DNA of 64,000 nt, taken from positions 1-64,000 of the IMG/VR virus record IMGVR_UViG_3300046543_000266. One strand, 5' to 3'. Positions 5,379 through 59,290 of this stretch are shown here, in pieces (within the stretch, counting starts at the first letter, position 1; each line of letters starts with the position of its first letter). A program made the translations under genes and the position numbers. The notes beneath the pieces were generated by a model that saw only the letters and a list, made by a program, of their open reading frames with translations, was not told where the DNA came from and did no database searches.

Positions 5379-5387
5379 TAGTAAATA
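5379..5387 (+). promoter_or_regulatory. TAGTAAATA box, putative phage late promoter
   Basis: Exact 9-mer, one of nine on + strand, all at gene boundaries. Confidence 0.65.
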
Positions 5388-6478: not shown

Positions 6479-6487
6479 TAGTAAATA
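6479..6487 (+). promoter_or_regulatory. TAGTAAATA box
   Basis: Exact motif just after stop 6475. Confidence 0.65.
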
Positions 6488-9009: not shown

Positions 9010-9054
9010 TAGTAAATACAGCACAGTAGCAAACTCCGCAGCACGTAGTAAATA
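9010..9054 (+). promoter_or_regulatory. tandem TAGTAAATA boxes
   Basis: Exact motifs at 9010-9018 and 9046-9054 upstream of 9144. Confidence 0.7.
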
Positions 9055-10449: not shown

Positions 10450-11192
10450 ACAAGGCGATACCAGCGGCTACGAAACCCGCATCTAACTCTCCCACCGTAA
10501 TCCGCTTGACGAAGATCAAGCAGTGGTGGCTCCCAGTCGACGCCGAGTCCTACTTGGCTTTGCGCGAGGCCGGTGTGCCACTCGTCCGCTTTCATGTGGA
10601 CTTCCTCCCAGCGCTATCCCTCATTACGAAGAAGCATCGCATCCGTGCGAAGGAAGTATCCTTCAAGGATGAAATCCTGACGCCGTTCCTCAATCTGGTC
10701 GGCACCACCTGGAACAAGAAGCAACACTGCCGGGCAACCATCGCCGCGCGGTCCATGAAGTTCGAGACCCTGAAGCCCGAGGTCTACACGAAAGCGAAAG
10801 AGAGCATCACGAAGCTCACCGACATCCTCGAGAAGTTCTTTGTTCGGTGGGGCTTCAAATACCAGTTCGAGTACAGCGAGTCGCGCGGTAAGTGTAAATT
10901 GAATGTGGAGTACTACTTCGACAGCACCAAGATGCCGGTCATTCCTCTGGAGACCCCGGTCACTGATCTGCCGAAGGTCCAACTGAAGATCGGCTTTACG
11001 CGCATCACGATGACGTTCGGCGACCGCTATGTGGATACGCTGATCGAAGTCAGTCAGGGTGGCAAGTTCACCCCGTTGCACTCAACGCGTTGCACGTACT
11101 CGCAGATATCCTCAGTCAAACCTATGATCGCGGCACTCATGCAGGTGCCCGATCATGACATTCACAACTTCGACAACTCGGCCACCCCATGA
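10446..11192 (+). CDS. hypothetical protein
   Basis: 248 aa ORF coupled (ATGA) to neighbours. Confidence 0.75.
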   Translation: MNKAIPAATKPASNSPTVIRLTKIKQWWLPVDAESYLALREAGVPLVRFHVDFLPALSLITKKHRIRAKEVSFKDEILTPFLNLVGTTWNKKQHCRATIAARSMKFETLKPEVYTKAKESITKLTDILEKFFVRWGFKYQFEYSESRGKCKLNVEYYFDSTKMPVIPLETPVTDLPKVQLKIGFTRITMTFGDRYVDTLIEVSQGGKFTPLHSTRCTYSQISSVKPMIAALMQVPDHDIHNFDNSATP

Positions 11193-13870
11193 TTATGGCT
11201 CTCGCCAAAAAGAAAGTCGCCGCTCCGACAAAGAAGGCGGCTTCGTATTCGAGCAAGGACATCACAACCTTGCGCTTCCCGGACAACGTCCGCTCGAACC
11301 CTTCGATGTATCTTGGGTCGGTGGACGCCGCTGGTGTGTGGCTCACGGCCCGGGAATTGCTGGACAACGCGCTGGATGAGCATCTGGCGCACCGTAACGA
11401 CGCAGTCATGCTGCACGTCGATAAGGACGGCTCCTATTGGGTGCTGGATCGTGGTCACGGCGTGCCGCAGGGTGTGAAGAAGTTCAGCGTGCACGTCAAC
11501 GGCAAGGACATCGAGACGAAGATGCCCACGATGCAAGCCGTCTTCGGTGAACTGCATACGTCGGGCAAGTATCGCTCGGATGCATACGCAACCTCGGTTG
11601 GTACGCACGGCATCGGCGCCAAGGGCACCAACGCAACCTCGGAGTTCTTCGAGGTCTTCACGTTCTACGAAGGCCAGTGGTTCACCATCGGCTTCAAGAA
11701 GGGCAAGCTGGTCAAGCACGTCGCGAAGTGCAGCGCCCCGAAGGGTCCCGACGGCAAGACTGTTACCAAGGGCACGGTCATCCACTTCAAGCCGGATCCC
11801 ACGATCTTCACCGTCAAGTCCTTCCCACCCTCGATGGTGATGGAATGGGCCGACGTGATGTCGCATCTGAATCCCGGCTTCGCAATCGTCGTATCCAGCC
11901 CCAAGGGCAAGAAGCAGTTCCTGTCGAAAATCGGCCCGGCCGGTTACGTCCAGCAGCGCATCGAGAAGTTGAAGACCGAAGCTGAACGCCTGATGTTCGA
12001 GTACAAGTCGGATCTGGCGGACGTCGTGGTGGCCTTCTCGAACTATGACGGCTGCGACGTGCGCGGTTTCACGAACGGCCTGAACAATGCTCAGGGCGGC
12101 AAACATCTGGACGCTGTGACCGGCGCACTGTACGCGGGCCTCAAGCCCTACATCAAAACCAAGCGCGTGGAAGGGAAGCCGGTTCCGGTGTTCCGCGAGG
12201 CTGACTTCAAGGAAGGCTTGGTTGGTCTTGTCAACGCCAAGCTCCACAAGGCCGAGTTCAGTTCGCAGGACAAGGCACGGCTGACTGATGCTCGTATGGG
12301 TGCGGCGTTCGAGAAAGAGCTCACGCTGGCAACCATCAAGTTCTTCAAGGACAACAAGGCACTGGCACTGCGTCTGTGTGCGCGGGCCACAAAGCTCAAC
12401 GAACTGAAGACCAAGTTCACGTTGTCGAAGAAGGCTGCGTCCACGCTCAACGCTATGAAGCGCAACGGTCTGCCCGCCAAGTACGCTGGATTCGACAGCA
12501 AGACGAAGACCGAAGACCGCGAACTGTTCATCGTCGAAGGGGATTCGGCAGGTGGTACGGTCAAGAAGGGTCGCTTCCCGTATCAGGCAGTGCTGCCCCT
12601 CAAGGGCAAGATCATGAACGCGTTGAAGGATGGCAAGGGCAAGACGCTGGAGTCGGAGGAAATCCTGAACATCCTGGCGGCTATCGGCTTCGACGTCAAG
12701 GCAGTCGACCCGTATGCCAAGCTCACGGTCGGCAAGATTGTGTGTCTGGCTGACCCGGATCCGGACGGCCCCTTCATCGGCGACACCCGCATCAACTTCC
12801 GCTACAATACGCACGGCACGACGCAGTCGGCCAGCATCGAGTGCCTCGCCAAGATGGCAGCTGATGGTACGGAGTTCGTGGTTCCGGTGTGGAACGGCCA
12901 AACCGAAGTGTGGGCCAGCGCCAGCGCTCGCCTCGAACGCAACGTCGAGCAACTGGTTGCTCTCGAGATCGGCAAGACGAAGTACAAGGTCAGCGTCGAT
13001 CACAAGTGGCTGTGTGTTAAAACCGATGCGCTGCGCGGCCGCGACGTGGGCGAACATGCAGACAACCTCGTGTTCGTCAGGGCGGCTGATCTGAAGGTAG
13101 GCGACCGGGTGTTCATGCCCGCAGCTAACAACACGCGGGACAAGTCTAGCTGCGACTACGCGACGAAGCTCGGGTTCGCCCCAGTCTCGAAGATGCGCAT
13201 CCAGCAGTTGGACCAGCCGGTTCCGGTGTACTGTCTGAGCGTGCCGAAGTATCACCACTTCATGCTGCCTTCGGGTATCGTGTCGAGCAACTGCCACATC
13301 AACTCGTTGCTGCTCACGCTGTTCTACCGCTATCTGCCTGAGCTGTTCAGCCGGGGCATGGTGTTCGTTGCCAACAGCCCGGAGTTCTACAGCATCCACA
13401 AGAATCAGCTGGTGACCGGCGAGTCGCTGTCGGCAATGGGCAAGAACCTGAAGCGCATCAAGGCACCGGCCAACACGCCGATCCATCACATCAAGGGTTG
13501 GGGAGAAATCGATGCTCCGCTGATGCGCATCTTGGCAATGGACCCGGCCACGCGGAAGCTCATCAAGATTGGCGCAATCGAGCACGACGACAAGGTTGAC
13601 TTCGAGCGGCTCATGAACGACGACGTTGCCTATCGCCGTGACATGTTGGGCTTGCCGTCCAATGCCGTCGGCGGTGACGTGGAGGAGGAAGGCACTCCGA
13701 AGTCCAAGGCCGCACGTAAAGTACCTGTGAACAAAGCGGTCGTCGCAGCCAAGAAAATTGCGACAGCCAACCGGAAGATCGTTCACCGTCGCGATGAAAT
13801 CGAAGCCAAGCGCATCGAGAAGCGACGTGGCCTCCGTCCGGTGGGCAAGACGTTGCGCAAAGCCGCATAA
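11189..13870 (+). CDS. gyrB: type IIA topoisomerase ATPase/Toprim subunit (GyrB/ParE-like), intein-containing
   Basis: ELLDNALDE, DRGHG, GTHGIGAKGTNA (GHKL); IVEGDSAGG, PLKGKIMN, DPDPDG (Toprim). Confidence 0.95.
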   Translation: MIMALAKKKVAAPTKKAASYSSKDITTLRFPDNVRSNPSMYLGSVDAAGVWLTARELLDNALDEHLAHRNDAVMLHVDKDGSYWVLDRGHGVPQGVKKFSVHVNGKDIETKMPTMQAVFGELHTSGKYRSDAYATSVGTHGIGAKGTNATSEFFEVFTFYEGQWFTIGFKKGKLVKHVAKCSAPKGPDGKTVTKGTVIHFKPDPTIFTVKSFPPSMVMEWADVMSHLNPGFAIVVSSPKGKKQFLSKIGPAGYVQQRIEKLKTEAERLMFEYKSDLADVVVAFSNYDGCDVRGFTNGLNNAQGGKHLDAVTGALYAGLKPYIKTKRVEGKPVPVFREADFKEGLVGLVNAKLHKAEFSSQDKARLTDARMGAAFEKELTLATIKFFKDNKALALRLCARATKLNELKTKFTLSKKAASTLNAMKRNGLPAKYAGFDSKTKTEDRELFIVEGDSAGGTVKKGRFPYQAVLPLKGKIMNALKDGKGKTLESEEILNILAAIGFDVKAVDPYAKLTVGKIVCLADPDPDGPFIGDTRINFRYNTHGTTQSASIECLAKMAADGTEFVVPVWNGQTEVWASASARLERNVEQLVALEIGKTKYKVSVDHKWLCVKTDALRGRDVGEHADNLVFVRAADLKVGDRVFMPAANNTRDKSSCDYATKLGFAPVSKMRIQQLDQPVPVYCLSVPKYHHFMLPSGIVSSNCHINSLLLTLFYRYLPELFSRGMVFVANSPEFYSIHKNQLVTGESLSAMGKNLKRIKAPANTPIHHIKGWGEIDAPLMRILAMDPATRKLIKIGAIEHDDKVDFERLMNDDVAYRRDMLGLPSNAVGGDVEEEGTPKSKAARKVPVNKAVVAAKKIATANRKIVHRRDEIEAKRIEKRRGLRPVGKTLRKAA
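12770..13291 (+). mobile_element. 174 aa mini-intein, class-3-like, Pro at position 1
   Basis: Inserted between DPDPDG and CHINSLLL; PFIGDT..SVDHKWL..VYCLSV..HHF..GIVSSN|C; no LAGLIDADG motifs. Confidence 0.85.
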
Positions 13871-13879
13871 GGAATCGAC

Positions 13880-15463
13880 ATGGTAATCAAAAGACGAGTA
13901 GCGAAGCCCGAAGCCGACGATATGGACTTCGACAAACCCGCACCGCGCACACGGGCTCCGGCCCGTCGTGGCAAAGCGCCGGTCAAGCGGGTTCTGAAGG
14001 GTACTGAGGACAAGCACGTCGATAACGAAAGCATCCGTAGCTTCGGCAAGCGCAACATGACCACGTATGCTGTGGCGGTCAACCTCGATCGCAGCGTGCC
14101 TGACATGTACGACGGGTGGAAGCCTGTGCATCGCCGCATCATCTGGGCGGCTTCCACTCAGGCTCGCGACCTAACCAAGACGGCGCGGGTCGTGGGCGAT
14201 ACGCTTGGCAAGTATCACCCCCACGGTGACCGCAGCGTGGCCGACGCCATCGAGACGATGGTCAACATGCCTACTGCTCCGCTTTTGGGCAAGGGCAATT
14301 GGGGATCGATGATCGACAGCGCGGCAGCCATGCGATACACCAACATGAAGCTGTCGGCGTATGGCCTCACGTTCCTGAACCCGCACTACATCCACTCGGA
14401 AGTCACGTCGTTCGTACCCAACTACGACGACAAGGACGTGGAGCCGGTCACGCTTCCGGCGCAGTTGCCGAACGTGCTGATCAACGGCTCCGAGGGTATC
14501 GGCGTTGGCATTACCACTGGCTTGCCGTCGTTCACGCCTGAGTCGATGATCAGTGTGCTGGAGAGCATGCTCAAGGGTGAGAAGCTGAAGGCCGTCGACT
14601 TCGCGAAGCGCCTGAAGTTCGCTCACAAGTGGGGCGGGCAGATCGTCCAGTCGAAGGAGAACCGCTTATCAATGATGGGCATCTTCAACGGCAGCGTCGG
14701 CACTGTACAGTTCGAGTCGGCCATCGAAGTGGATCGTGACCGCAAGAGCATGACCATCGGCGACTGGCCTCCAGGCACTAACCTCGAGAAGTTCGTGGCG
14801 CGTGTCCGGGCCATGCCTGAATGTCAGCGCTGCTATAACAGCGAAGGCGTCACCAACTTCACGATCGAGTGCAAGCCCGCCTACAACTATGTGCAGTTCG
14901 ACAAGTTCGTTGAGAAGGTTCAGGCGGCGACTCGGCAGAAGCGCAACTACAAGATCAACGTAACGCAGCGTGTCGCCAACGATAACGACGGCGTCATTAG
15001 CTTCGAGACCAAGTTCTTGGCGCTGTCGGTGCCTGAGCTGATCTTGCAGTGGTTGCGTATGCGCCTCCAGTTGGAACTGAAAAGTCTGACGTTCCGGATC
15101 AAGAAGCAGGAAGCAGCCATCGCCTACTCCGAGCTCCTGATCTACGCGTGCGACAAACTGGATCTGATCTTCAAGGCGATTCGTAGCAGCGACCCGAAAG
15201 CCGCGATGGTAAAGCTGCTGAAGATCACCGAGGAGCAAGCCAAGCAAATCCTGGAGTTGCGCTTGTCACAACTCACGCGCATGGATCAAAGCGCGATGAA
15301 GGAAAAGCTGGCCGAGCAACGCAGTCATCACAAGCAACTGCTCGTGTGGCAGAAGAAGCCTCGCAGCAAGGTGCTTCTCGATCTCGAAGATGTCCGAGCC
15401 GCAATCGACAAGGACCGGAAGTTCGAAAACACCAAGGAAGAGCAGTCGCTTACGGTGGTGTAA
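13880..15463 (+). CDS. gyrA: type IIA topoisomerase breakage-reunion subunit (GyrA/ParC-like), no CTD pinwheel
   Basis: DGWKPVHRRI, KTARVVGDTLGKYHPHGD, AAMRYT (Tyr 14336-14338); only 527 aa. Confidence 0.95.
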   Translation: MVIKRRVAKPEADDMDFDKPAPRTRAPARRGKAPVKRVLKGTEDKHVDNESIRSFGKRNMTTYAVAVNLDRSVPDMYDGWKPVHRRIIWAASTQARDLTKTARVVGDTLGKYHPHGDRSVADAIETMVNMPTAPLLGKGNWGSMIDSAAAMRYTNMKLSAYGLTFLNPHYIHSEVTSFVPNYDDKDVEPVTLPAQLPNVLINGSEGIGVGITTGLPSFTPESMISVLESMLKGEKLKAVDFAKRLKFAHKWGGQIVQSKENRLSMMGIFNGSVGTVQFESAIEVDRDRKSMTIGDWPPGTNLEKFVARVRAMPECQRCYNSEGVTNFTIECKPAYNYVQFDKFVEKVQAATRQKRNYKINVTQRVANDNDGVISFETKFLALSVPELILQWLRMRLQLELKSLTFRIKKQEAAIAYSELLIYACDKLDLIFKAIRSSDPKAAMVKLLKITEEQAKQILELRLSQLTRMDQSAMKEKLAEQRSHHKQLLVWQKKPRSKVLLDLEDVRAAIDKDRKFENTKEEQSLTVV

Positions 15464-17466: not shown

Positions 17467-17475
17467 TAGTAAATA
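17467..17475 (+). promoter_or_regulatory. TAGTAAATA box
   Basis: Exact motif upstream of 17549; variant CAGTAAATA at 17392-17400. Confidence 0.65.
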
Positions 17476-17548
17476 AACGGTGTGCCACAAACCACACAGC
17501 ACAACGTCTTCTGTATTATCAACCTTTCCCAATCAAGGAATACAAATC

Positions 17549-19224: not shown

Positions 19225-19737
19225 ATGCTTGTCCATCAACTGGTAGTGCTTCCGACGCCGGAAACTCTCGACTATCTCGGGAAAGTGTTTTCGGCGTGTC
19301 CGTTCAACCTCGATCTGTCGCAAGCGTATGTCGAGATAAACAGCTCGCAGACGTCGATGGTTCCCGACACTGCCCGCATCTACACGGCGCGAGCAGGAAA
19401 TCTGCAGGTGTTCTACGACGCGTCCACTCAGCAGACGTCGTTGCTGTTGCCGTTGCACAGTCCGGCGCTCGAATCGCGCGTTTCCGAACTGCGGGAGTCT
19501 GCGCCGTCTGCGTTCTACGGCGAGCACTACTTCCCGAATCTGGTGCTGGTCCGCGGAATGCCGCCGCTGGCTCGGACGTACCGCTCGTTCATTGCCAGTG
19601 TTGCAACCACGCTGGCGAGCGATCCCAACCAAGTGTTGACGTTCGACGCCGAGCTCGTGATGTCCAAGGATTTCCACACCATCCCGGACGCCGACTACTA
19701 CGAATCGCAGTTGGCAAACAACTTCGCACGTCGTTGA
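19225..19737 (+). CDS. Acb1/T4 gp57B-like 2H phosphoesterase fold, catalytic His absent
   Basis: GGAGG SD; ETLDYL, AGNLQVF, SLLLPLHSPALESR, YFPNLVL align by eye with recalled gp57B. Confidence 0.5.
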   Translation: MLVHQLVVLPTPETLDYLGKVFSACPFNLDLSQAYVEINSSQTSMVPDTARIYTARAGNLQVFYDASTQQTSLLLPLHSPALESRVSELRESAPSAFYGEHYFPNLVLVRGMPPLARTYRSFIASVATTLASDPNQVLTFDAELVMSKDFHTIPDADYYESQLANNFARR

Positions 19738-19754
19738 TCCTGGAATAGCCGTAT

Positions 19755-19796
19755 GCACGCGGAGCAGTTTTACAACTCCGCGTGCCCTAGTAAATA
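19755..19796 (+). promoter_or_regulatory. hairpin followed by TAGTAAATA box
   Basis: GCACGCGGAG/CTCCGCGTGC stem 19755-19785; motif 19788-19796. Confidence 0.65.
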
Positions 19797-19899
19797 GTTT
19801 GCAGTTACCTGATCTTCTCTAACCTATCGAAAGGGTTATCGCGCGTTACCTGTTGTCGGCGTTCAGTCGATACCATTACTCCCCACGCTGAAATAAACT

Positions 19900-20352
19900 A
19901 TGGACTCAATCGTCCTTCCACATTGTTGGGTCTGTGAGAAACGTTTCACAGATGCCAGTCCACCCGGACCCGCCAACAAGGAAATCCACCACATCATCCC
20001 TCGTCAGGCTGGTGGATCCGACGGACCGACAGTTACGATTTGTGACGGTCATCACGCGGCGCTCCACAAGATTGCGCTGCGTATGAAAAGCGGCAAACCC
20101 CACTTCGATCTTCTGGTAGGCGACACACCGCCCCAGAAGCAGAAGGTGCTTTGGCTGGCGTCCCGGGTCCACATCGCGTTCGAGGCCGTCAAGAATGACC
20201 CGAACAAGAAGGTGGTGGTAGTCATGGGTCTCAACGCACAGCAGCAGTTGATGATTGATCGCCTCAAGAAAGTGTATCCCACCCTGAAGTCTCGCGAGGC
20301 CATTTTCAATCTCGCACTTCAGAACCTTTACAACCGTCACTTCCAGGAGTAA
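19900..20352 (+). CDS. HNH endonuclease with C-terminal RHH-like segment
   Basis: CWVC..EIHHIIPRQAGGSDGPTVTICDGHHAALH. Confidence 0.8.
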   Translation: MDSIVLPHCWVCEKRFTDASPPGPANKEIHHIIPRQAGGSDGPTVTICDGHHAALHKIALRMKSGKPHFDLLVGDTPPQKQKVLWLASRVHIAFEAVKNDPNKKVVVVMGLNAQQQLMIDRLKKVYPTLKSREAIFNLALQNLYNRHFQE

Positions 20353-20356
20353 GTTC

Positions 20357-20743
20357 ATGGATGAAATCAAAACCGGTGAAGTTATCATCGTCCACCTGAC
20401 CAACGGTCAGACCATCGTTGGCAGGGGTGCTCCCAACATCGACTCCGTCGAGGACGGCTTGCTGCTCGACTCGCCCCACGAATTGATTGGTGGTCAGCGC
20501 CCGGACGGCACTCTTGGCTTCGGGATGCAACCGTATCTGTCGATGGGTGGTCTGCTTCCGGCGTTTGAGCGCTTCGCCTTCGAGTGGGACAACATCGTCA
20601 CCGCCCGCGAATGTCCGGAGCAGATTCAGCGTGCGTTCCTGGAACTGACGAGTGGACTGCAGATTGCCAAGACGCTGCCGACCGGTGGACAAAACGGGCA
20701 AGGCCGACCCACAAACCCGGCCAGTTTGCTAGTGGTGCCCTAA
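20357..20743 (+). CDS. hypothetical, possible Sm-like fold
   Basis: IIVHLTNGQTIVG start pattern (weak). Confidence 0.6.
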   Translation: MDEIKTGEVIIVHLTNGQTIVGRGAPNIDSVEDGLLLDSPHELIGGQRPDGTLGFGMQPYLSMGGLLPAFERFAFEWDNIVTARECPEQIQRAFLELTSGLQIAKTLPTGGQNGQGRPTNPASLLVVP

Positions 20744-20839
20744 TTAAAAGCCGGTAAAGTCACGCGGTAACATTTACTGGCGGGCATTTCTGCAGGGTCT
20801 ACTTACCGCAAATAGGCAATAACGCCATTGTACATACGG

Positions 20840-20845
20840 TATAAT
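20840..20845 (+). promoter_or_regulatory. -10 promoter element
   Basis: TATAAT in a 330-bp intergenic gap upstream of 21075/21767. Confidence 0.55.
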
Positions 20846-21074
20846 GTTTCCAGTGGTGCTTAATTGGTTTGCGGGTTTATAGCAGGTTGCGTTTTACCAA
20901 ACTCGCAAACCAGTCACGTGCTGGTAATCCACAGCAGGCATCACAGGTCCCGCGTATCGTATATCCACTCAGTCTGGTGGAAGGCTCTAGATCAGATCCG
21001 TGCTACGAGGCTCGGGTTCGTACTCCTCAAACACATATCATAAAAACGGTCGACCCTCAGGGTCACACATCACT

Positions 21075-21749
21075 ATGCTGAAGAAAGACACTCTTGGTAG
21101 TGCCAGTGCCAAATCCCTCGATGAGGCCTTCAAATGTGGTGAGTGCGTACACTTCAAGCAGCACGCGCACTCCAGTCGTCAGCAGGTATGTTCAAAAGAA
21201 GGGATACGTGCCGTCGGCATCGCCCCTAAGTGTTTCACCCCGGACGTTACGGTCATCGCCCAGAACTCCGACCACTTCGTCCAGGTCGCAGCAATGTTTC
21301 AGTCGTTCACACCAAAGCAGCGCCGCATCTTTCTGGCGCTCCTGCGCAGCAACAAGAAGAAGCCGCACGCGATGGGAACCAAGCTGTACTTCAAGGTCGG
21401 CAAGGATTTCATCAGCAACTACCTGTGCGGTTATGTCGCGGGCTACACATCCAGTGGCGAGCTCATGCTCATCGGCAGCCCGGATCGCAAAACTCGTGGT
21501 ACGTCGTTCGTGTCTTACCTTGCTCCTGATAGTGCTGGACTGCTTACTGCCTCTGAATGGAAAGTGAAACGTCAATCCTTGAAGGAACGCAATCTGATTC
21601 ACGATCCCTCAAATCGTGTGATCAAGCGTGCCTCGGTCGTAGACAACTACGAACCGCCGACCATCGACAACGCCCCGTCGTCGTGGTACGACAAAAAGGA
21701 ACCGGTCAAGCGCCGGAAGACGGATTCACTTTCCTTCAACATCAGTTAA
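21075..21749 (+). CDS. hypothetical protein with Cys cluster
   Basis: CGECVHF..C..C; ATG 21075 in frame. Confidence 0.7.
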   Translation: MLKKDTLGSASAKSLDEAFKCGECVHFKQHAHSSRQQVCSKEGIRAVGIAPKCFTPDVTVIAQNSDHFVQVAAMFQSFTPKQRRIFLALLRSNKKKPHAMGTKLYFKVGKDFISNYLCGYVAGYTSSGELMLIGSPDRKTRGTSFVSYLAPDSAGLLTASEWKVKRQSLKERNLIHDPSNRVIKRASVVDNYEPPTIDNAPSSWYDKKEPVKRRKTDSLSFNIS

Positions 21750-21766
21750 TAAAAAGAGGCAGTATT

Positions 21767-22711
21767 TTGTTACGGCAACTTTTGGGTCTCCGGCCTTCGG
21801 AGATGGCGAAAATCGGCGGGGCCGTTTTCGCCTACTTGTTTCATCGGATCACACAGCGCGAGCTCGTGGCGATCATCGATGATAAAGAGAAAGAGGAACG
21901 TATCCTTGAAGTCGTTAGACGCAAGGGCTACGTTCTTCGAGACTGCAAACTGTACGCTTGGGCGGCGTACCGTGCGCGTTTCGGCTATCCCAAGCCAAGC
22001 ATTAAAGAGTTCGGTGTTACTCGAAGGGACGCCGCCTTCTTGTCCCGGCTCAATCTCGGTCACTTGTCCATTGACTTCGAGTCTTACAATTTGGAAGACT
22101 TCAAGGCTCTTGTAGAAGGCACGGTGAAGAGTCCGACCATGGATGCATACATCGGACGCTTCATTAGCAAGAAGATGTTGTTCTTAACTCGCAGTTACGG
22201 GGTGAAGCGCAGTGATCTCGAATCCGACATGCTGTCCGGCGCTCTGCGTGCCGTGTACATGCACTTCCCGAGATTCGAGTCGCTGCTGCATTTCACAAAT
22301 GTGGCAAAGGCGGCAATCCATAACACTGGTATGTCGCTCATCACGTACCACACCAGTCCAGCCCGACAACGGCTGTTTATCAACGAGAGCGGTGGCTTCG
22401 AGGCGACCCACGTCGATGTGGACGTGATGTCCAGCGTCGAGGCACCGCAGCAATACATGGCCCACGCGAAGGAATCCCTGGAGGTCCTCGTAAAGCTGGC
22501 GCACAAAATGCGTCCCGATGTTCAACGGTTCTTGTTGTGTTGTGCAGGTCACTACGACGAGGGATTCTCGGACTACCTGGAAACCGATAACTCCTTGGCC
22601 GTAGATAGCATGGCGTACTCGCGGTATCTGGGTAAGGCCCGGAAGTACTTCGAGTTCAGTGAAACGCAGGTACAGAAACTCTTCGAGAAATTGAAGATGC
22701 ATTTAGAGTAA
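21767..22711 (+). CDS. putative sigma-70-family phage sigma factor
   Basis: Region-2-like RSDLESDMLSGALRAVYMHF..HFTNVAKAAIHN..LI; region-4-like C-terminal FSETQVQKLFEKL; TTG start after GAGG inferred. Confidence 0.55.
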   Translation: MLRQLLGLRPSEMAKIGGAVFAYLFHRITQRELVAIIDDKEKEERILEVVRRKGYVLRDCKLYAWAAYRARFGYPKPSIKEFGVTRRDAAFLSRLNLGHLSIDFESYNLEDFKALVEGTVKSPTMDAYIGRFISKKMLFLTRSYGVKRSDLESDMLSGALRAVYMHFPRFESLLHFTNVAKAAIHNTGMSLITYHTSPARQRLFINESGGFEATHVDVDVMSSVEAPQQYMAHAKESLEVLVKLAHKMRPDVQRFLLCCAGHYDEGFSDYLETDNSLAVDSMAYSRYLGKARKYFEFSETQVQKLFEKLKMHLE

Positions 22712-22727
22712 CCAACGGGGTGCTTTA

Positions 22728-23039
22728 ATGTGTAACGACGCAGCGGTCCTGTCCAGAGAACTAACCGAGTTCCAACGACGTCAGCAGGTGTTTGCCGCTC
22801 AGTTCAATCTGAGCCTTGATGAATACCTTCGCATCATGCGAGCATCCACGACCGAAGAAGCTATCGTGATCCTCGAACTGACAAAAGTAAGGAAGCACCG
22901 CTCGTTACACCGTAGTAAGGCACATGACCAAGTTCGCAGGTGGCTAGATCTGAATCTGTTGGATAAGCCCCTGCACCCTTCCCAGTACATATTCTTCCGG
23001 CCGAAGTGGCCGATCACGTGGCAGTTCCCTAAACCCTAA
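22728..23039 (+). CDS. hypothetical protein
   Basis: 103 aa ORF. Confidence 0.6.
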   Translation: MCNDAAVLSRELTEFQRRQQVFAAQFNLSLDEYLRIMRASTTEEAIVILELTKVRKHRSLHRSKAHDQVRRWLDLNLLDKPLHPSQYIFFRPKWPITWQFPKP

Positions 23040-23173
23040 CCTCCAGTCAGCTATGCAAGGTATCTACGTTCTTATTGGCATCGTCATCGCAGGTACGGCA
23101 TTTCTATCAGCCGTCGGCTACGGCTACTGACTAGCCTAGCCATTCATCAATCAACCCTCTGAGGTTCATTACT

Positions 23174-23617
<444 letters not shown>

Positions 23618-23653
23618 CCTGCTGCATCCAACGCTCATTATTGAGGAGAAGTA

Positions 23654-23809
23654 ATGCACGGAAAACGATATGGGGTTGATCGCTTCGCGGCTCGTGACAA
23701 GAAGCTGAACCACCTCCATTCGCGTCTTGCTCTGATGGAGCGGGCTGGCAACACGGCGGAGATCACCCGCCTTCACAAGTTGATCAAGCAACTGTCGTGC
23801 TCTATCTGA
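23654..23809 (+). CDS. small basic protein (51 aa, below ORF-track cutoff)
   Basis: GAGGAG SD; MHGKRYGVDRFAARDKKLNHLHSRL... Confidence 0.65.
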   Translation: MHGKRYGVDRFAARDKKLNHLHSRLALMERAGNTAEITRLHKLIKQLSCSI

Positions 23810-23934
23810 AGTAGTCGTTCATCTTGTTTCGCTTGTAGCACTTTGCAGTATAGGCCAATCTAAAATCACAAACGGGACACACCGACCCTTCCCAAACAAT
23901 CATCGGTGTGTCCCTTAAAACAAAGGTAATAAAA

Positions 23935-25692
23935 ATGAAAAAGACGACCATCGCAATCGCAATCCTGTCCTCGTTCGCAGCTCCGGCATTCGCAACGCAG
24001 TACGTGGCCTACGACACGGTTCCGGGCAGTCACGGCCAGTCGGAAGTGGACTACGGCAACGTCACGATGCAGGGTACGAACGGCACGAAGATCCACAACG
24101 TCGCGGCGGGTACGTCAGGCACGGATGCAGTCAATGTCAACCAGCTGAACAGCGCAATCGCTACGGTCAAGACCCAGAAGGGCGATACCGGCGCGACGGG
24201 TGCCACAGGTGCTCAAGGGGTCGCGGGTAAGGACGGCAAGAACGGCATCGATGGTAAGAACGGCATCGATGGTAAGAACGGCATCGATGGAGCAGCGGGT
24301 GCGACCGGCGCTCAAGGCGTCGCAGGTAAGGATGGTGCGAAGGGCGACACTGGCGCACAGGGTATCCAGGGTGTGAAAGGCGATAAGGGTGAGAAGGGCA
24401 ACACTGGCGCTTCTGTTGCTGGCGTGTCTATCAACGGCACGACTGTGACGACAACGCTCGACAACGGTTCGCAGGTGAACGGCACTATCACGGGTCTGGC
24501 TACGACGGAGCAGTTGAACCAGACGAACGTCAACGCCAGCGCTCTGGGTTCGAAGGTGGACCAAGCTACCACGACGGCGAATCAAGCCAAGTCCATCGCA
24601 CAAGGGGCAGACGCCAAGTCGAACACGGCAATCGGCATCGCCGCCGGAGCAGCTATCACCGCGACCGGTGCAGCCATCGTCAGCGGCATCGCCTACGAGA
24701 AGGCTGACAATGCTCAGCAAGTCGCTGGTCAGGCCAACGCCACGTCCAACCAAGCGAAGAACATCGCTCAAGGTGCGGCGTACCAAGCCAGTCACGCAGA
24801 CCAAGTCGCGGCTGAAGCCAACACGACGGCAGGTAAGGCAACCGTCACAGCACAGGCAGCAGATGCGAAGTCGGACATCGCACTGGCAACCGGCGTGAAG
24901 AACAGCGGTGACATCAACAAGCTGAACGCGGGCTTGGCGACTACCAACTCGCATGTCGCGCAGAACACGGCAGACATAGCGGCCAATCAGCAAGCCATCC
25001 GCTCGGAAGCTGGCCGTGCTCAAGACGCTGAGTGGAAGCTGGGATCAGCGATCACGTCGGAAACGTCGCGCGCAACGGCTGCCGAGCAGGGCATCCAGTC
25101 GCAAGTGACGGGCAACACGAAGAGCATCAACAATCTCAACGCACGCCAAGCCAACACCGAAGCGTGGATCGGAAATGCGAACGCGGGAGCCATCGGTCAA
25201 GGCTCGCAAGTGAAGGCGAACAACGCAGTTGCACTCGGTGCTGGCTCCGTGGCAGATCGTGACAATACCGTGTCCGTAGGCGCTGCTGGTCAGGAGCGTC
25301 AGGTCACCAACGTCGCAGCCGGTACGCAAGCAACCGACGCGGTGAACGTGTCGCAGCTGAACAGCTACATGCGTCAGACAGCAAAGGCGGTGGACAACTC
25401 GAATGCCTACACGGATCAGCGAGTCAACGCTCTGCAGTCGTCGTTCGATAGCTTCAAGAAGGATACCTACGGCGGCATCGCAACGGCGCTGGCAATTGCA
25501 GGACTGCCGCAGCCGACGGCTCCGGGTCGTTCGATGGTGTCGGTGGCGGGTTCCACGTATCACGGGGCAACCGGTCTGGCCGCTGGCTACTCGCAGGTAA
25601 CGCAAGACGAGCGTTGGGTGATGAAGGCGTCGGTTACCACGAGCAACCGTGGCGACTTCGGTGCTGTGCTCGGCGCTGGTCGTCAATTCTGA
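23935..25692 (+). CDS. trimeric autotransporter adhesin (YadA-like) with collagen-like G-X-Y segment
   Basis: Signal peptide MKKTTIAIAILSSFAAPAFA; VAAG..TDAVNVxQL necks; GXY repeats; AVALGAGSVA head; anchor GIATALA..GAGRQF. Confidence 0.92.
   Translation: MKKTTIAIAILSSFAAPAFATQYVAYDTVPGSHGQSEVDYGNVTMQGTNGTKIHNVAAGTSGTDAVNVNQLNSAIATVKTQKGDTGATGATGAQGVAGKDGKNGIDGKNGIDGKNGIDGAAGATGAQGVAGKDGAKGDTGAQGIQGVKGDKGEKGNTGASVAGVSINGTTVTTTLDNGSQVNGTITGLATTEQLNQTNVNASALGSKVDQATTTANQAKSIAQGADAKSNTAIGIAAGAAITATGAAIVSGIAYEKADNAQQVAGQANATSNQAKNIAQGAAYQASHADQVAAEANTTAGKATVTAQAADAKSDIALATGVKNSGDINKLNAGLATTNSHVAQNTADIAANQQAIRSEAGRAQDAEWKLGSAITSETSRATAAEQGIQSQVTGNTKSINNLNARQANTEAWIGNANAGAIGQGSQVKANNAVALGAGSVADRDNTVSVGAAGQERQVTNVAAGTQATDAVNVSQLNSYMRQTAKAVDNSNAYTDQRVNALQSSFDSFKKDTYGGIATALAIAGLPQPTAPGRSMVSVAGSTYHGATGLAAGYSQVTQDERWVMKASVTTSNRGDFGAVLGAGRQF
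24235..24288 (+). repeat. 3 x 18 bp tandem repeat (GKNGID)
   Basis: GG(C/T)AAGAACGGCATCGAT x3. Confidence 0.9.
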
Positions 25693-25696
25693 CGCG

Positions 25697-25742
25697 TAGT
25701 AAATAGCAGTACAAGAGGGGTTCCTTGTTTGGGACCCCTCTT
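25697..25742 (+). promoter_or_regulatory. TAGTAAATA box plus hairpin
   Basis: Motif 25697-25705; AAGAGGGGTTCC/GGGACCCCTCTT stem 25713-25742. Confidence 0.65.
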
Positions 25743-28190: not shown

Positions 28191-28526
28191 ATGAAAACAA
28201 TCTATCGTGCCGACGACGGCAAAGAATTCGACACCGCTCTCGACTGCCATAGATACGAGCGCAGCATGTCCATTGGTTCTGACGCCCGCTTCGTCGACAA
28301 GCTGGCGGTCATTCTGCAGCCGGTTATCGCTTCCGACGATCGAGGCAACGACGTCATCCATGCAAGTACTGATGACACGGATGAGTACAGTCTGACGGAA
28401 ATGGCGATCTACCTTGCGGATCATCTCGACGAGCTGGTTGAACTGCGAGACCAGATAGCGCACGAGCGCATGAAGCCGAAGAATCCCGGGTACAAGGTCA
28501 AGCCCAAGTCGAACCGTAGTAAATAA
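28191..28526 (+). CDS. hypothetical protein
   Basis: IYRADDGKEFDTALDCHRYE start motif typical of small phage proteins. Confidence 0.7.
   Translation: MKTIYRADDGKEFDTALDCHRYERSMSIGSDARFVDKLAVILQPVIASDDRGNDVIHASTDDTDEYSLTEMAIYLADHLDELVELRDQIAHERMKPKNPGYKVKPKSNRSK
28517..28525 (+). promoter_or_regulatory. TAGTAAATA box
   Basis: Exact motif overlapping the stop of 28191..28526. Confidence 0.6.
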
Positions 28527-31409: not shown

Positions 31410-31477
31410 GTTGTTTTTACGCAACACGGGCCTTCGGAGGGCATGGTATAATAAAGTGCGGGCGCGCCTCTTCCGCA
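31410..31477 (+). promoter_or_regulatory. palindrome + extended -10 + 5' stem-loop
   Basis: GTTGTTTTTACGCAAC 31410-31425; 21 nt; TGgTATAAT (31447-31452); GTGCGG/CCGCAC hairpin. Confidence 0.8.
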
Positions 31478-49931: not shown

Positions 49932-49957
49932 AAAAGGGAGCCTCTGTGGCTCCTTTT
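49932..49957 (+). terminator. Rho-independent terminator
   Basis: AAAAGGGAGCC..GGCTCCTTTT. Confidence 0.7.
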
Positions 49958-49961
49958 ACGC

Positions 49962-50023
49962 GTTGTTTTTACGCAACACTGCCGGTTGCCCCGTATGTTA
50001 TAATAAGGTGCGCCCACGCGCAC
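49962..50023 (+). promoter_or_regulatory. palindrome + extended -10 + 5' stem-loop
   Basis: GTTGTTTTTACGCAAC 49962-49977; 21 nt; TGtTATAAT (49999-50004); GTGCG/CGCAC hairpin. Confidence 0.8.
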
Positions 50024-58998: not shown

Positions 58999-59238
58999 AT
59001 GGAACTTCTGGTTCTCTACTCGCAGATCAATTCTTCAACTGGCGAACCTGTCCAGCGCCGGAGGCTCGTCAATACGTTGAGCAGGTTCATGTCGGACATG
59101 GATGCGAAGGGTCGTGACTACGAACTCATCGATGCGTACCCGGTGACCGACACGGCGGCTGAGGGACTTCGATGGGACATCGACGCTGAGAACGAGGCGC
59201 AGCGAACAAAAGCAAAGTCTGGGAAGGCTAGTAAATAA
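58999..59238 (+). CDS. hypothetical protein
   Basis: GAGGA SD. Confidence 0.65.
   Translation: MELLVLYSQINSSTGEPVQRRRLVNTLSRFMSDMDAKGRDYELIDAYPVTDTAAEGLRWDIDAENEAQRTKAKSGKASK
59229..59237 (+). promoter_or_regulatory. TAGTAAATA box
   Basis: Exact motif overlapping stop 59238, upstream of 59291. Confidence 0.65.
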
Positions 59239-59290
59239 ACGGTGTAGCAACCAAACAAAACTACCCTTCCCAACACACAGGATCCGTATC

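What the first reader, a model, noticed from the sequence alone, without database searches (positions are those of the whole stretch)
21767..22711. Unannotated sigma-70-like factor, candidate reader of TAGTAAATA
The protein has a sigma region-2-like segment (RSDLESDMLSGALRAVYMHF..HFTNVAKAAIHN..LI) and a C-terminal region-4-like helix (ARKYFEFSETQVQKLFEKLK), preceded by a novel ~120 aa N-terminus. It lies downstream of a host-type TATAAT at 20840, as expected for a cascade in which a host-sigma promoter expresses the phage sigma. The pairing with the 9-mer box is inference.
Basis: inference. Interest (0 to 1): 0.65.

Follow-up and report, generated by a model that had tools for sequence, protein, structure and literature searches.

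The report
Divergent second sigma-like factor, jumbo phage
The gene is real and its predicted fold resembles a bacterial sigma factor, so this soil jumbo phage probably carries two proteins that redirect the host's RNA polymerase; which one reads the phage's TAGTAAATA promoter box cannot yet be told.

Summary
The ORF at 21767-22711 (+) is a real gene of 314 aa, with a TTG start and an AAGAGG Shine-Dalgarno. The genome is a complete 217.6-kb phiRSL1-like jumbo phage from rhizosphere metagenomes. No sequence or profile method calls the protein a sigma factor. Its AlphaFold model does resemble one. Residues 108-200 match sigma domain 2, and more than half of the 50 best PDB matches are sigma factors, T4 gp55 among them. 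The C-terminal domain resembles sigma domain 4 only weakly. The family is large (619 clusters at 50% identity). It includes PaBG gp112, which a 2020 paper tentatively called a second sigma factor from an HHpred match.

Both families co-occur in every relative I checked.

The box is real. Its core is (A)GTAAATA, and 30 of 30 8-mers and 46 of 47 7-mers point the same way as the genes. It precedes replication genes, so it behaves as a middle promoter, and it is conserved in phiRSL1.

Which of the two proteins reads the box cannot be decided here. Verdict: sigma-like factor partly supported; pairing with the box unproven.

The parts
21767..22711 (+). Gene for the 314-aa sigma-like protein (P0001), TTG start, stop at 22709-22711
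   Evidence: conserved family
21754..21759 (+). Shine-Dalgarno AAGAGG, 7 nt before the TTG start
   Evidence: read directly
21767..22087 (+). N-terminal helical domain (residues 1-107). It is strongly conserved (FAYLF, GY.LKNCKLYAWA), has no assigned fold and was not folded alone
22088..22366 (+). Sigma-domain-2-like four-helix core (residues 108-200) and the best conserved part of the family (F139, P168 invariant; H175, K181 nearly so)
22367..22459 (+). Low-confidence linker (residues 201-231, pLDDT below 50)
22460..22708 (+). C-terminal helical domain (residues 232-314), weakly sigma-domain-4-like, ending in LFEKLK (family consensus LFxKLR)
21075..21749 (+). Upstream partner gene P0078 (224 aa, phrog_17701, whose 'DNA topoisomerase' label is unverified). 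A gene carrying that label, or of that size and position, sits next to the P0001 homologue in every relative checked
22728..23039 (+). Downstream small gene P0077 (103 aa), conserved in phiRSL1 (ORF012), function unknown
20838..20846 (+). GGTATAATG, a host-type -10-like element 229 nt before the start of P0078; no good -35
20863..20915 (+). Long hairpin in the untranslated leader (the leader folds with z = -3.15); no Rfam match
19788..19796 (+). Nearest upstream TAGTAAATA box, before the HNH gene at 19900; no terminator was detected between it and the cassette
5379..5387 (+). TAGTAAATA box
6479..6487 (+). TAGTAAATA box
9010..9054 (+). Two TAGTAAATA boxes (9010 and 9046) ahead of the block that holds the topoisomerase II genes
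17467..17475 (+). TAGTAAATA box
25697..25705 (+). TAGTAAATA box
28517..28525 (+). TAGTAAATA box
59229..59237 (+). TAGTAAATA box

Best explanation
P0001 is a very divergent sigma-70-family-like transcription factor of a phiRSL1-like jumbo phage that has no RNA polymerase of its own. It consists of a conserved N-terminal domain of unknown fold, a sigma-domain-2-like core, a flexible linker and a small C-terminal helical domain that may be sigma-domain-4-like. It belongs to the family of PaBG gp112. It is made from a conserved three-gene cassette (P0078-P0001-P0077) that sits behind a host-type -10 element in the early region. Inferred, not shown: it binds host core RNA polymerase through the domain-2-like core and directs it to one class of phage promoters, working beside, or in sequence with, the phage's second and more canonical sigma (P0076). 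Which of the two reads the (A)GTAAATA box is open. I give P0001 about 0.3, P0076 about 0.45, and another arrangement the rest.
Confidence: 0.6

Rival explanations
1. P0001 is sigma-like, but the (A)GTAAATA box is read by the canonical phage sigma P0076. P0001 serves another promoter class, or acts as a co-factor, appropriator or decoy on RNA polymerase.
For: P0076 (genome 170468-171439, minus strand) matches phrog_17569 'RNA polymerase sigma factor' at E 1.3e-76 and weakly matches Sigma70_r2. Relatives annotate it as a sigma. Its region 2.3/2.4 keeps the F...WF...R signature that suits an AT-rich -10-like box with the same TAAATA core as the T4 late promoter (own knowledge). A sigma-70-like TTGCAT-N18-TATAAA lies about 6 kb upstream in the same transcription direction, so P0076 could also be made early.
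Against: P0076 sits among genes that themselves follow GTAAATA boxes, with a CGTAAATA about 3 kb upstream at 174653. This fits a product of that promoter class at least as well as its reader. No experiment or phyletic pattern separates the two, because both families are present in every relative checked.
Confidence: 0.3
2. P0001 is not a transcription factor. The sigma-like fold is a generic helical arrangement, and the conserved P0078-P0001 pair works in DNA replication, topology or another early function.
Against: Sigma factors are enriched far beyond their share of the libraries in three independent structure searches and in the language-model search. An independent published HHpred run gave 97% for a family member. 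Domain order and lengths (domain 2, linker, small C-terminal domain) fit ECF-like sigmas.
Confidence: 0.1

Closest known systems
PaBG gp112 (Pseudomonas phage PaBG, Baikalvirus), 'possible putative sigma factor' in Evseev et al. 2020 (PMC7412058)
   Same: Same protein family: the family profile matches it over its full length at E 9.6e-39. It has the same upstream neighbour carrying the phrog_17701 'DNA topoisomerase' label, and the genome also has a canonical sigma (gp118, the P0076 family).
   Different: It is only distantly related in sequence and is 377 aa against 314. PaBG shows no enrichment of GTAAATA (3 sites against 6 for the control). Its function is untested there too.
ECF-type (group 4) sigma factors such as E. 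coli sigma-E, and sigma-28 (FliA)
   Same: Predicted architecture of domain 2, linker and a small C-terminal helical domain. These are the best structural matches. The pattern of region 2.2 and the C-terminal LFxKLR resemble them.
   Different: There is no profile-level similarity. P0001 has an extra conserved 107-aa N-terminal domain. Sigma domain 4 is not demonstrated.
T4 gp55 with gp33 and the gp45 clamp (late transcription from TATAAATA)
   Different: gp55 is essentially domain 2 only and needs gp33 and the sliding clamp. There is no sequence similarity. The box here precedes replication (middle) genes, not late genes. A gp33-like role for P0077 or P0078 is pure speculation.
P0076 family (phiRSL1, BcepSauron, Motura 'RNA polymerase sigma factor'; PaBG gp118)
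   Same: It is in the same genomes, is of similar size (323 aa), and has an N-terminal extension followed by domain 2 and a short C-terminal part.
   Different: No detectable sequence or profile similarity to P0001. P0076 is recognised by PHROG and RefSeq as a sigma, P0001 is not.

Membership tests
Sigma-70 family (Pfam Sigma70_r2 / r4; NCBIfam TIGR02937) | Sequence-profile match to region 2 | tested here: not met
   No Pfam hit for P0001 at E up to 10. None among 115 family members. NCBIfam found none. PDB profile searches found none. hhalign against RpoE orthologues and against the phage's own sigma family gave probability of 1% or less. One published HHpred result on family member PaBG gp112 gave 97%; it was not reproduced here.
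Sigma-70 family | Domain 2 fold (four-helix core that binds the beta' clamp helices and the -10 element) | tested here: met
Sigma-70 family | Domain 4 helix-turn-helix (binds the beta flap and the -35 element) | tested here: inconclusive
Sigma-70 family | Binding to core RNA polymerase | not testable with these tools
   The one complex prediction gave no verdict and is no evidence either way. This needs pull-down or in vitro reconstitution.
Sigma-70 family | Promoter-specific initiation | not testable with these tools
   No RNA runs hold this phage.
T4 gp55 family | Sequence homology to gp55; domain-2-only protein with a clamp-binding C-terminus | tested here: not met
   No sequence match to any PDB chain, gp55 included. 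P0001 has extra N- and C-terminal domains. The only link is fold resemblance.
PaBG gp112 / PHROG 19229 family | Full-length profile match and a conserved upstream neighbour | tested here: met
   Profile matches: E 9.6e-39 to PaBG gp112, 4e-59 to Aura gp211 and 7e-84 to GR11A gp38. PHROG 19229 matches at E 4.6e-10. The neighbour is conserved.

The most novel reading that the evidence does not exclude
phiRSL1-like and related jumbo phages (Ralstonia, Burkholderia, Achromobacter, Xanthomonas, Pseudomonas and Vibrio hosts) run a two-sigma programme on host RNA polymerase. The P0001/gp112 family would be a previously uncharacterised sigma class with its own conserved N-terminal domain and an obligate partner (P0078 family). 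It would be made early from host promoters and would read the T4-late-like (A)GTAAATA box that switches on replication genes and the second sigma.
Probability: 0.25. Interest if true: 0.7.

Novelty: new member of a known kind. Interest (0 to 1): 0.5.

Why it matters
A comparative survey describes its 'group 3' jumbo phages, those without their own RNA polymerase, as lacking sigma factors (PMC7824862). I assume, but did not confirm, that phiRSL1-like phages fall in that group. This lineage in fact carries one recognised sigma and, probably, a second very divergent one. Both are conserved together across phages of at least six host genera. The lineage also has a sharply defined -10-only promoter box. 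If P0001 binds host polymerase, the pair gives a tractable system for studying how a giant phage times its genes without its own polymerase. It would also give orthogonal sigma and promoter parts. The family has hundreds of members that are all labelled 'hypothetical', so one experiment would annotate many genomes.

Tried and rejected
- Near-identity DNA search against phage records found nothing.
- Sequence and profile searches for sigma similarity were all negative: Pfam, NCBIfam, PDB sequence and profiles, BLASTP of P0001 against P0076, and hhalign of family profiles against the P0076 family and RpoE orthologues.
- The RpoE word search returned only orthologues of 87% identity or more, so that profile was too shallow (Neff 1.3) to be a fair HHpred substitute.
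- Complex prediction of P0001 residues 100-205 with E. coli beta' 240-330 gave no verdict (score 0.00, controls not run). It is not evidence either way. It used E. coli rather than the unknown host and no alignments.
- A phyletic test to separate the two sigma candidates failed, because every phage with one family has the other. PhiXhv-12 looked like a P0001-only phage by tblastn but also has a P0076 homologue.
- Temporal logic does not separate them either. Both genes have sigma-70-like elements and GTAAATA-type boxes upstream in the same direction.
- AATTTTA was considered as a late promoter (12 of 12 co-oriented). Its count is what chance gives (my own estimate from base composition), and it is nearly absent from phiRSL1, so I did not adopt it.
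- Expression data: no RNA run holds this phage.
- Rfam found nothing in 19700-23950.
- The language-model search on partner P0078 gave only sub-threshold rows.

Full report
**What is at the coordinates.** The frame 21767-22711 (+) is open and encodes 314 residues. It begins with TTG at 21767, seven bases after AAGAGG (21754-21759). Homologues align from the first residues (consensus MLxxxLGL). The window is bases 1-64000 of a complete 217,605-bp virus record with direct terminal repeats. Near-identical DNA occurs in many rhizosphere metagenome runs and in no RNA run.

**Relatives.** tblastn finds full-length homologues at 34-48% identity in Burkholderia phages BcepSaruman, BcepSauron and BCSR5, Ralstonia phage phiRSL1 (ORF011) and Achromobacter phage Motura. 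Weaker homologues occur in Vibrio, Pseudomonas putida, Xanthomonas and Erwinia jumbo phages. All are 'hypothetical protein'. The word search gives 74 clusters. The exhaustive profile search gives 619 clusters at E up to 0.001, nearly all 300-390 aa long. PHROG 19229, of unknown function, is the only family hit.

**Is it a sigma factor? Sequence tests.** All were negative:
- Pfam found nothing for the protein at E up to 10 and nothing sigma-like in 115 diverse members.
- NCBIfam found nothing.
- phmmer and two family profiles against all PDB chains found no sigma.
- hhalign against the phage's own recognised sigma family and against RpoE orthologues gave probabilities of 1% or less. Both target profiles are shallow, so these are weak substitutes for HHpred.

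**Structure tests.**
- AlphaFold2 with 53 homologues gives mean pLDDT 83.5. The model has a confident N-terminal domain (1-107), a four-helix domain (108-200), a disordered linker (about 201-231) and a C-terminal helical domain (232-314).
- Foldseek's top rows are also nearly all sigma factors, at non-significant E values of 0.1-1.
- The ESM Atlas shape search has a viral 'RNA polymerase sigma factor family' cluster as its first row (query residues 104-311), and five of its ten rows are sigma-related.
- Language-model neighbours include viral Sigma70_r2 clusters at 0.96.
- A complex prediction with the E. coli beta' clamp helices returned no verdict and counts for nothing.

**Literature.** Evseev et al. 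2020 reported that PaBG gene 118 is a sigma-70 factor (HHpred 99.9%). They also reported that gene 112 is 'possibly' a second sigma (HHpred 97.2%, E 0.2; SigmaE 96.9%) (PMC7412058). The family profile built here matches PaBG gp112 over its full length at E 9.6e-39, so P0001 belongs to that family. This gives independent HHpred-level support. It also means the idea is not new for the family, although it remains untested and the proteins remain annotated as hypothetical.

A scan of the whole genome with Sigma70_r2 finds a weak hit at 170729-170848 on the minus strand. It lies in a 323-aa gene (P0076, genome 170468-171439) that matches phrog_17569 'RNA polymerase sigma factor' at E 1.3e-76. RefSeq annotates its relatives as sigma. 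Its region 2.3/2.4 (TTFIQNWFKSARSEV) keeps the aromatic signature of -10 readers (the comparison rests on my own knowledge).

P0001 and P0076 show no detectable similarity to each other. Both families are present in every relative examined: phiRSL1, BcepSauron/Saruman, BCSR5, Motura, the vB_PpuM phages, GR11A/GR7B, HRDY3, PaBG and PhiXhv-12. For eight long metagenomic contigs besides this genome's own, both hit lists give the same longest-contig length. The genome has no multisubunit RNA polymerase hit. It has no single-subunit hit either, but that search's control did not ring.

**The box.**
- TAGTAAATA occurs 9 times in the window (0.04 expected) and 16 times in the genome.
- The real core is shorter. 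AGTAAATA occurs 30 times, all co-oriented with the local genes. GTAAATA occurs 47 times, 46 of them co-oriented.
- 14 of the 16 9-mers are intergenic under my rough gene calls.
- By eye, many sites have GGT a few bases downstream, consistent with a start site.
- The genes that follow encode topoisomerase II, DnaB-like helicase, SbcC, UvsX, SSB, DNA polymerase, a large helicase and a phosphohydrolase. This is a replication or middle class, not a late structural one.
- The motif is conserved in phiRSL1, with the same strand layout (17 sites against 2 for the reversed control).
- GTAAATA is enriched in PhiXhv-12 (22 against 4), vB_PpuM-Aura (22 against 7) and GR11A (59 against 14), but not in PaBG (3 against 6).
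- Its last six bases equal those of the T4 late promoter TATAAATA (own knowledge).

**Who reads it.** Nothing here decides this. For P0001: its cassette lies in the early region behind GGTATAATG (20838-20846). That context is shared with other intergenic TATAAT sites, which mostly have the extended -10 form TGnTATAAT. In phiRSL1 the homologous cassette follows TTTACT-N17-TATACT. For P0076: it has canonical -10-reading residues, and a sigma-70-like TTGCAT-N18-TATAAA lies about 6 kb upstream in the same direction. Against a clean cascade: a TAGTAAATA box at 19788 lies upstream of the P0001 cassette with no detected terminator between them. A CGTAAATA at 174653 lies upstream of P0076.

**Conserved cassette.** P0078 (21075-21749, 224 aa, with Cys-x2-Cys near the N-terminus) matches phrog_17701 at E 3.8e-51. 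That PHROG carries a 'DNA topoisomerase' label that I could not verify. P0078, P0001 and P0077 are syntenic with phiRSL1 ORF010-012. A gene of about 210-310 aa, annotated 'DNA topoisomerase' in three of four records, immediately precedes the P0001 homologue in vB_PpuM-Aura, GR11A, PaBG and PhiXhv-12. Direct sequence similarity of P0078 to those distant neighbours is not significant, so the link rests on the shared label and position. Such a constant neighbour suggests a physical or functional partner, such as a co-factor or a regulator of the sigma-like protein. This is inference only.

**Verdict.** The interpretation 'sigma-like factor' is supported at the fold level and by one published HHpred result, but by no sequence test run here. 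The pairing with TAGTAAATA is unproven and has a strong rival in the same genome. The case is a new, unannotated member of a tentatively recognised divergent sigma-like family. It is of moderate interest, and of higher interest if the two-sigma programme is shown experimentally.

Noticed in passing
outside the window: G000:C1:170468-171439 (-), locus L002:1240-2211: A second, canonical phage sigma factor (P0076, 323 aa; phrog_17569 at E 1.3e-76, weak Sigma70_r2 hit). It lies next to the SSB and UvsX genes, the same order as PaBG gp118-gp117-gp116.
   Followed up: yes
window 31415-31453, 49954-50005; genome 74068-74100: A repeated early-promoter-like module: GCGTTGTTTTTACGCAACAC, with the TTTTACGC unit doubled at 49954 and 49967. 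About 25 nt downstream comes TATAATA in two copies (31415, 49967) and TATGAT in the third (74068). All are intergenic on the + strand. It could be an activator, repressor or UP-type site in front of host-type promoters.
   Followed up: partly
window 20850-21080: The 229-nt untranslated leader between GGTATAATG and the P0078 start folds unusually well (MFE -72.2 kcal/mol, z = -3.15), with a long hairpin at 20863-20915. It has no Rfam match and no obvious sequence similarity to the phiRSL1 leader by eye.
   Followed up: partly
window 23908-25692 (+): A 594-aa protein with collagen triple-helix repeats, YadA stalk and a YadA-like membrane-anchor domain (Pfam E 1e-18 to 7e-14). This is a trimeric-autotransporter-adhesin-like gene in a phage genome, followed by a TAGTAAATA box and a hairpin.
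   Followed up: no
window 19900-20352 (+): A small HNH-endonuclease-like ORF (weak Pfam and PHROG hits), directly downstream of the TAGTAAATA box at 19788.
   Followed up: no
genome-wide, e.g. window 59267-59276 and 17530-17540: A C-rich element CCCTTCCCA (or ACCCTTCCC) recurs in 5' untranslated regions shortly before start codons. It occurs 12 times in the genome, 9 of them intergenic.
   Followed up: no
genome 60207, 65495, 66451, 74204, 102077, 108537, 116489, 131839, 133857, 138547, 140576, 148534: AATTTTA occurs 12 times, all co-oriented with the genes and 9 of them intergenic, several before structural-region genes. The count is what chance predicts, and phiRSL1 has only one copy, so a late-promoter role is doubtful.
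   Followed up: partly
window 11189-15463 (+): Two adjacent genes for topoisomerase II large and small subunits (PHROG E 4e-123 and 2e-91), in the block downstream of the double TAGTAAATA box at 9010 and 9046.
   Followed up: no
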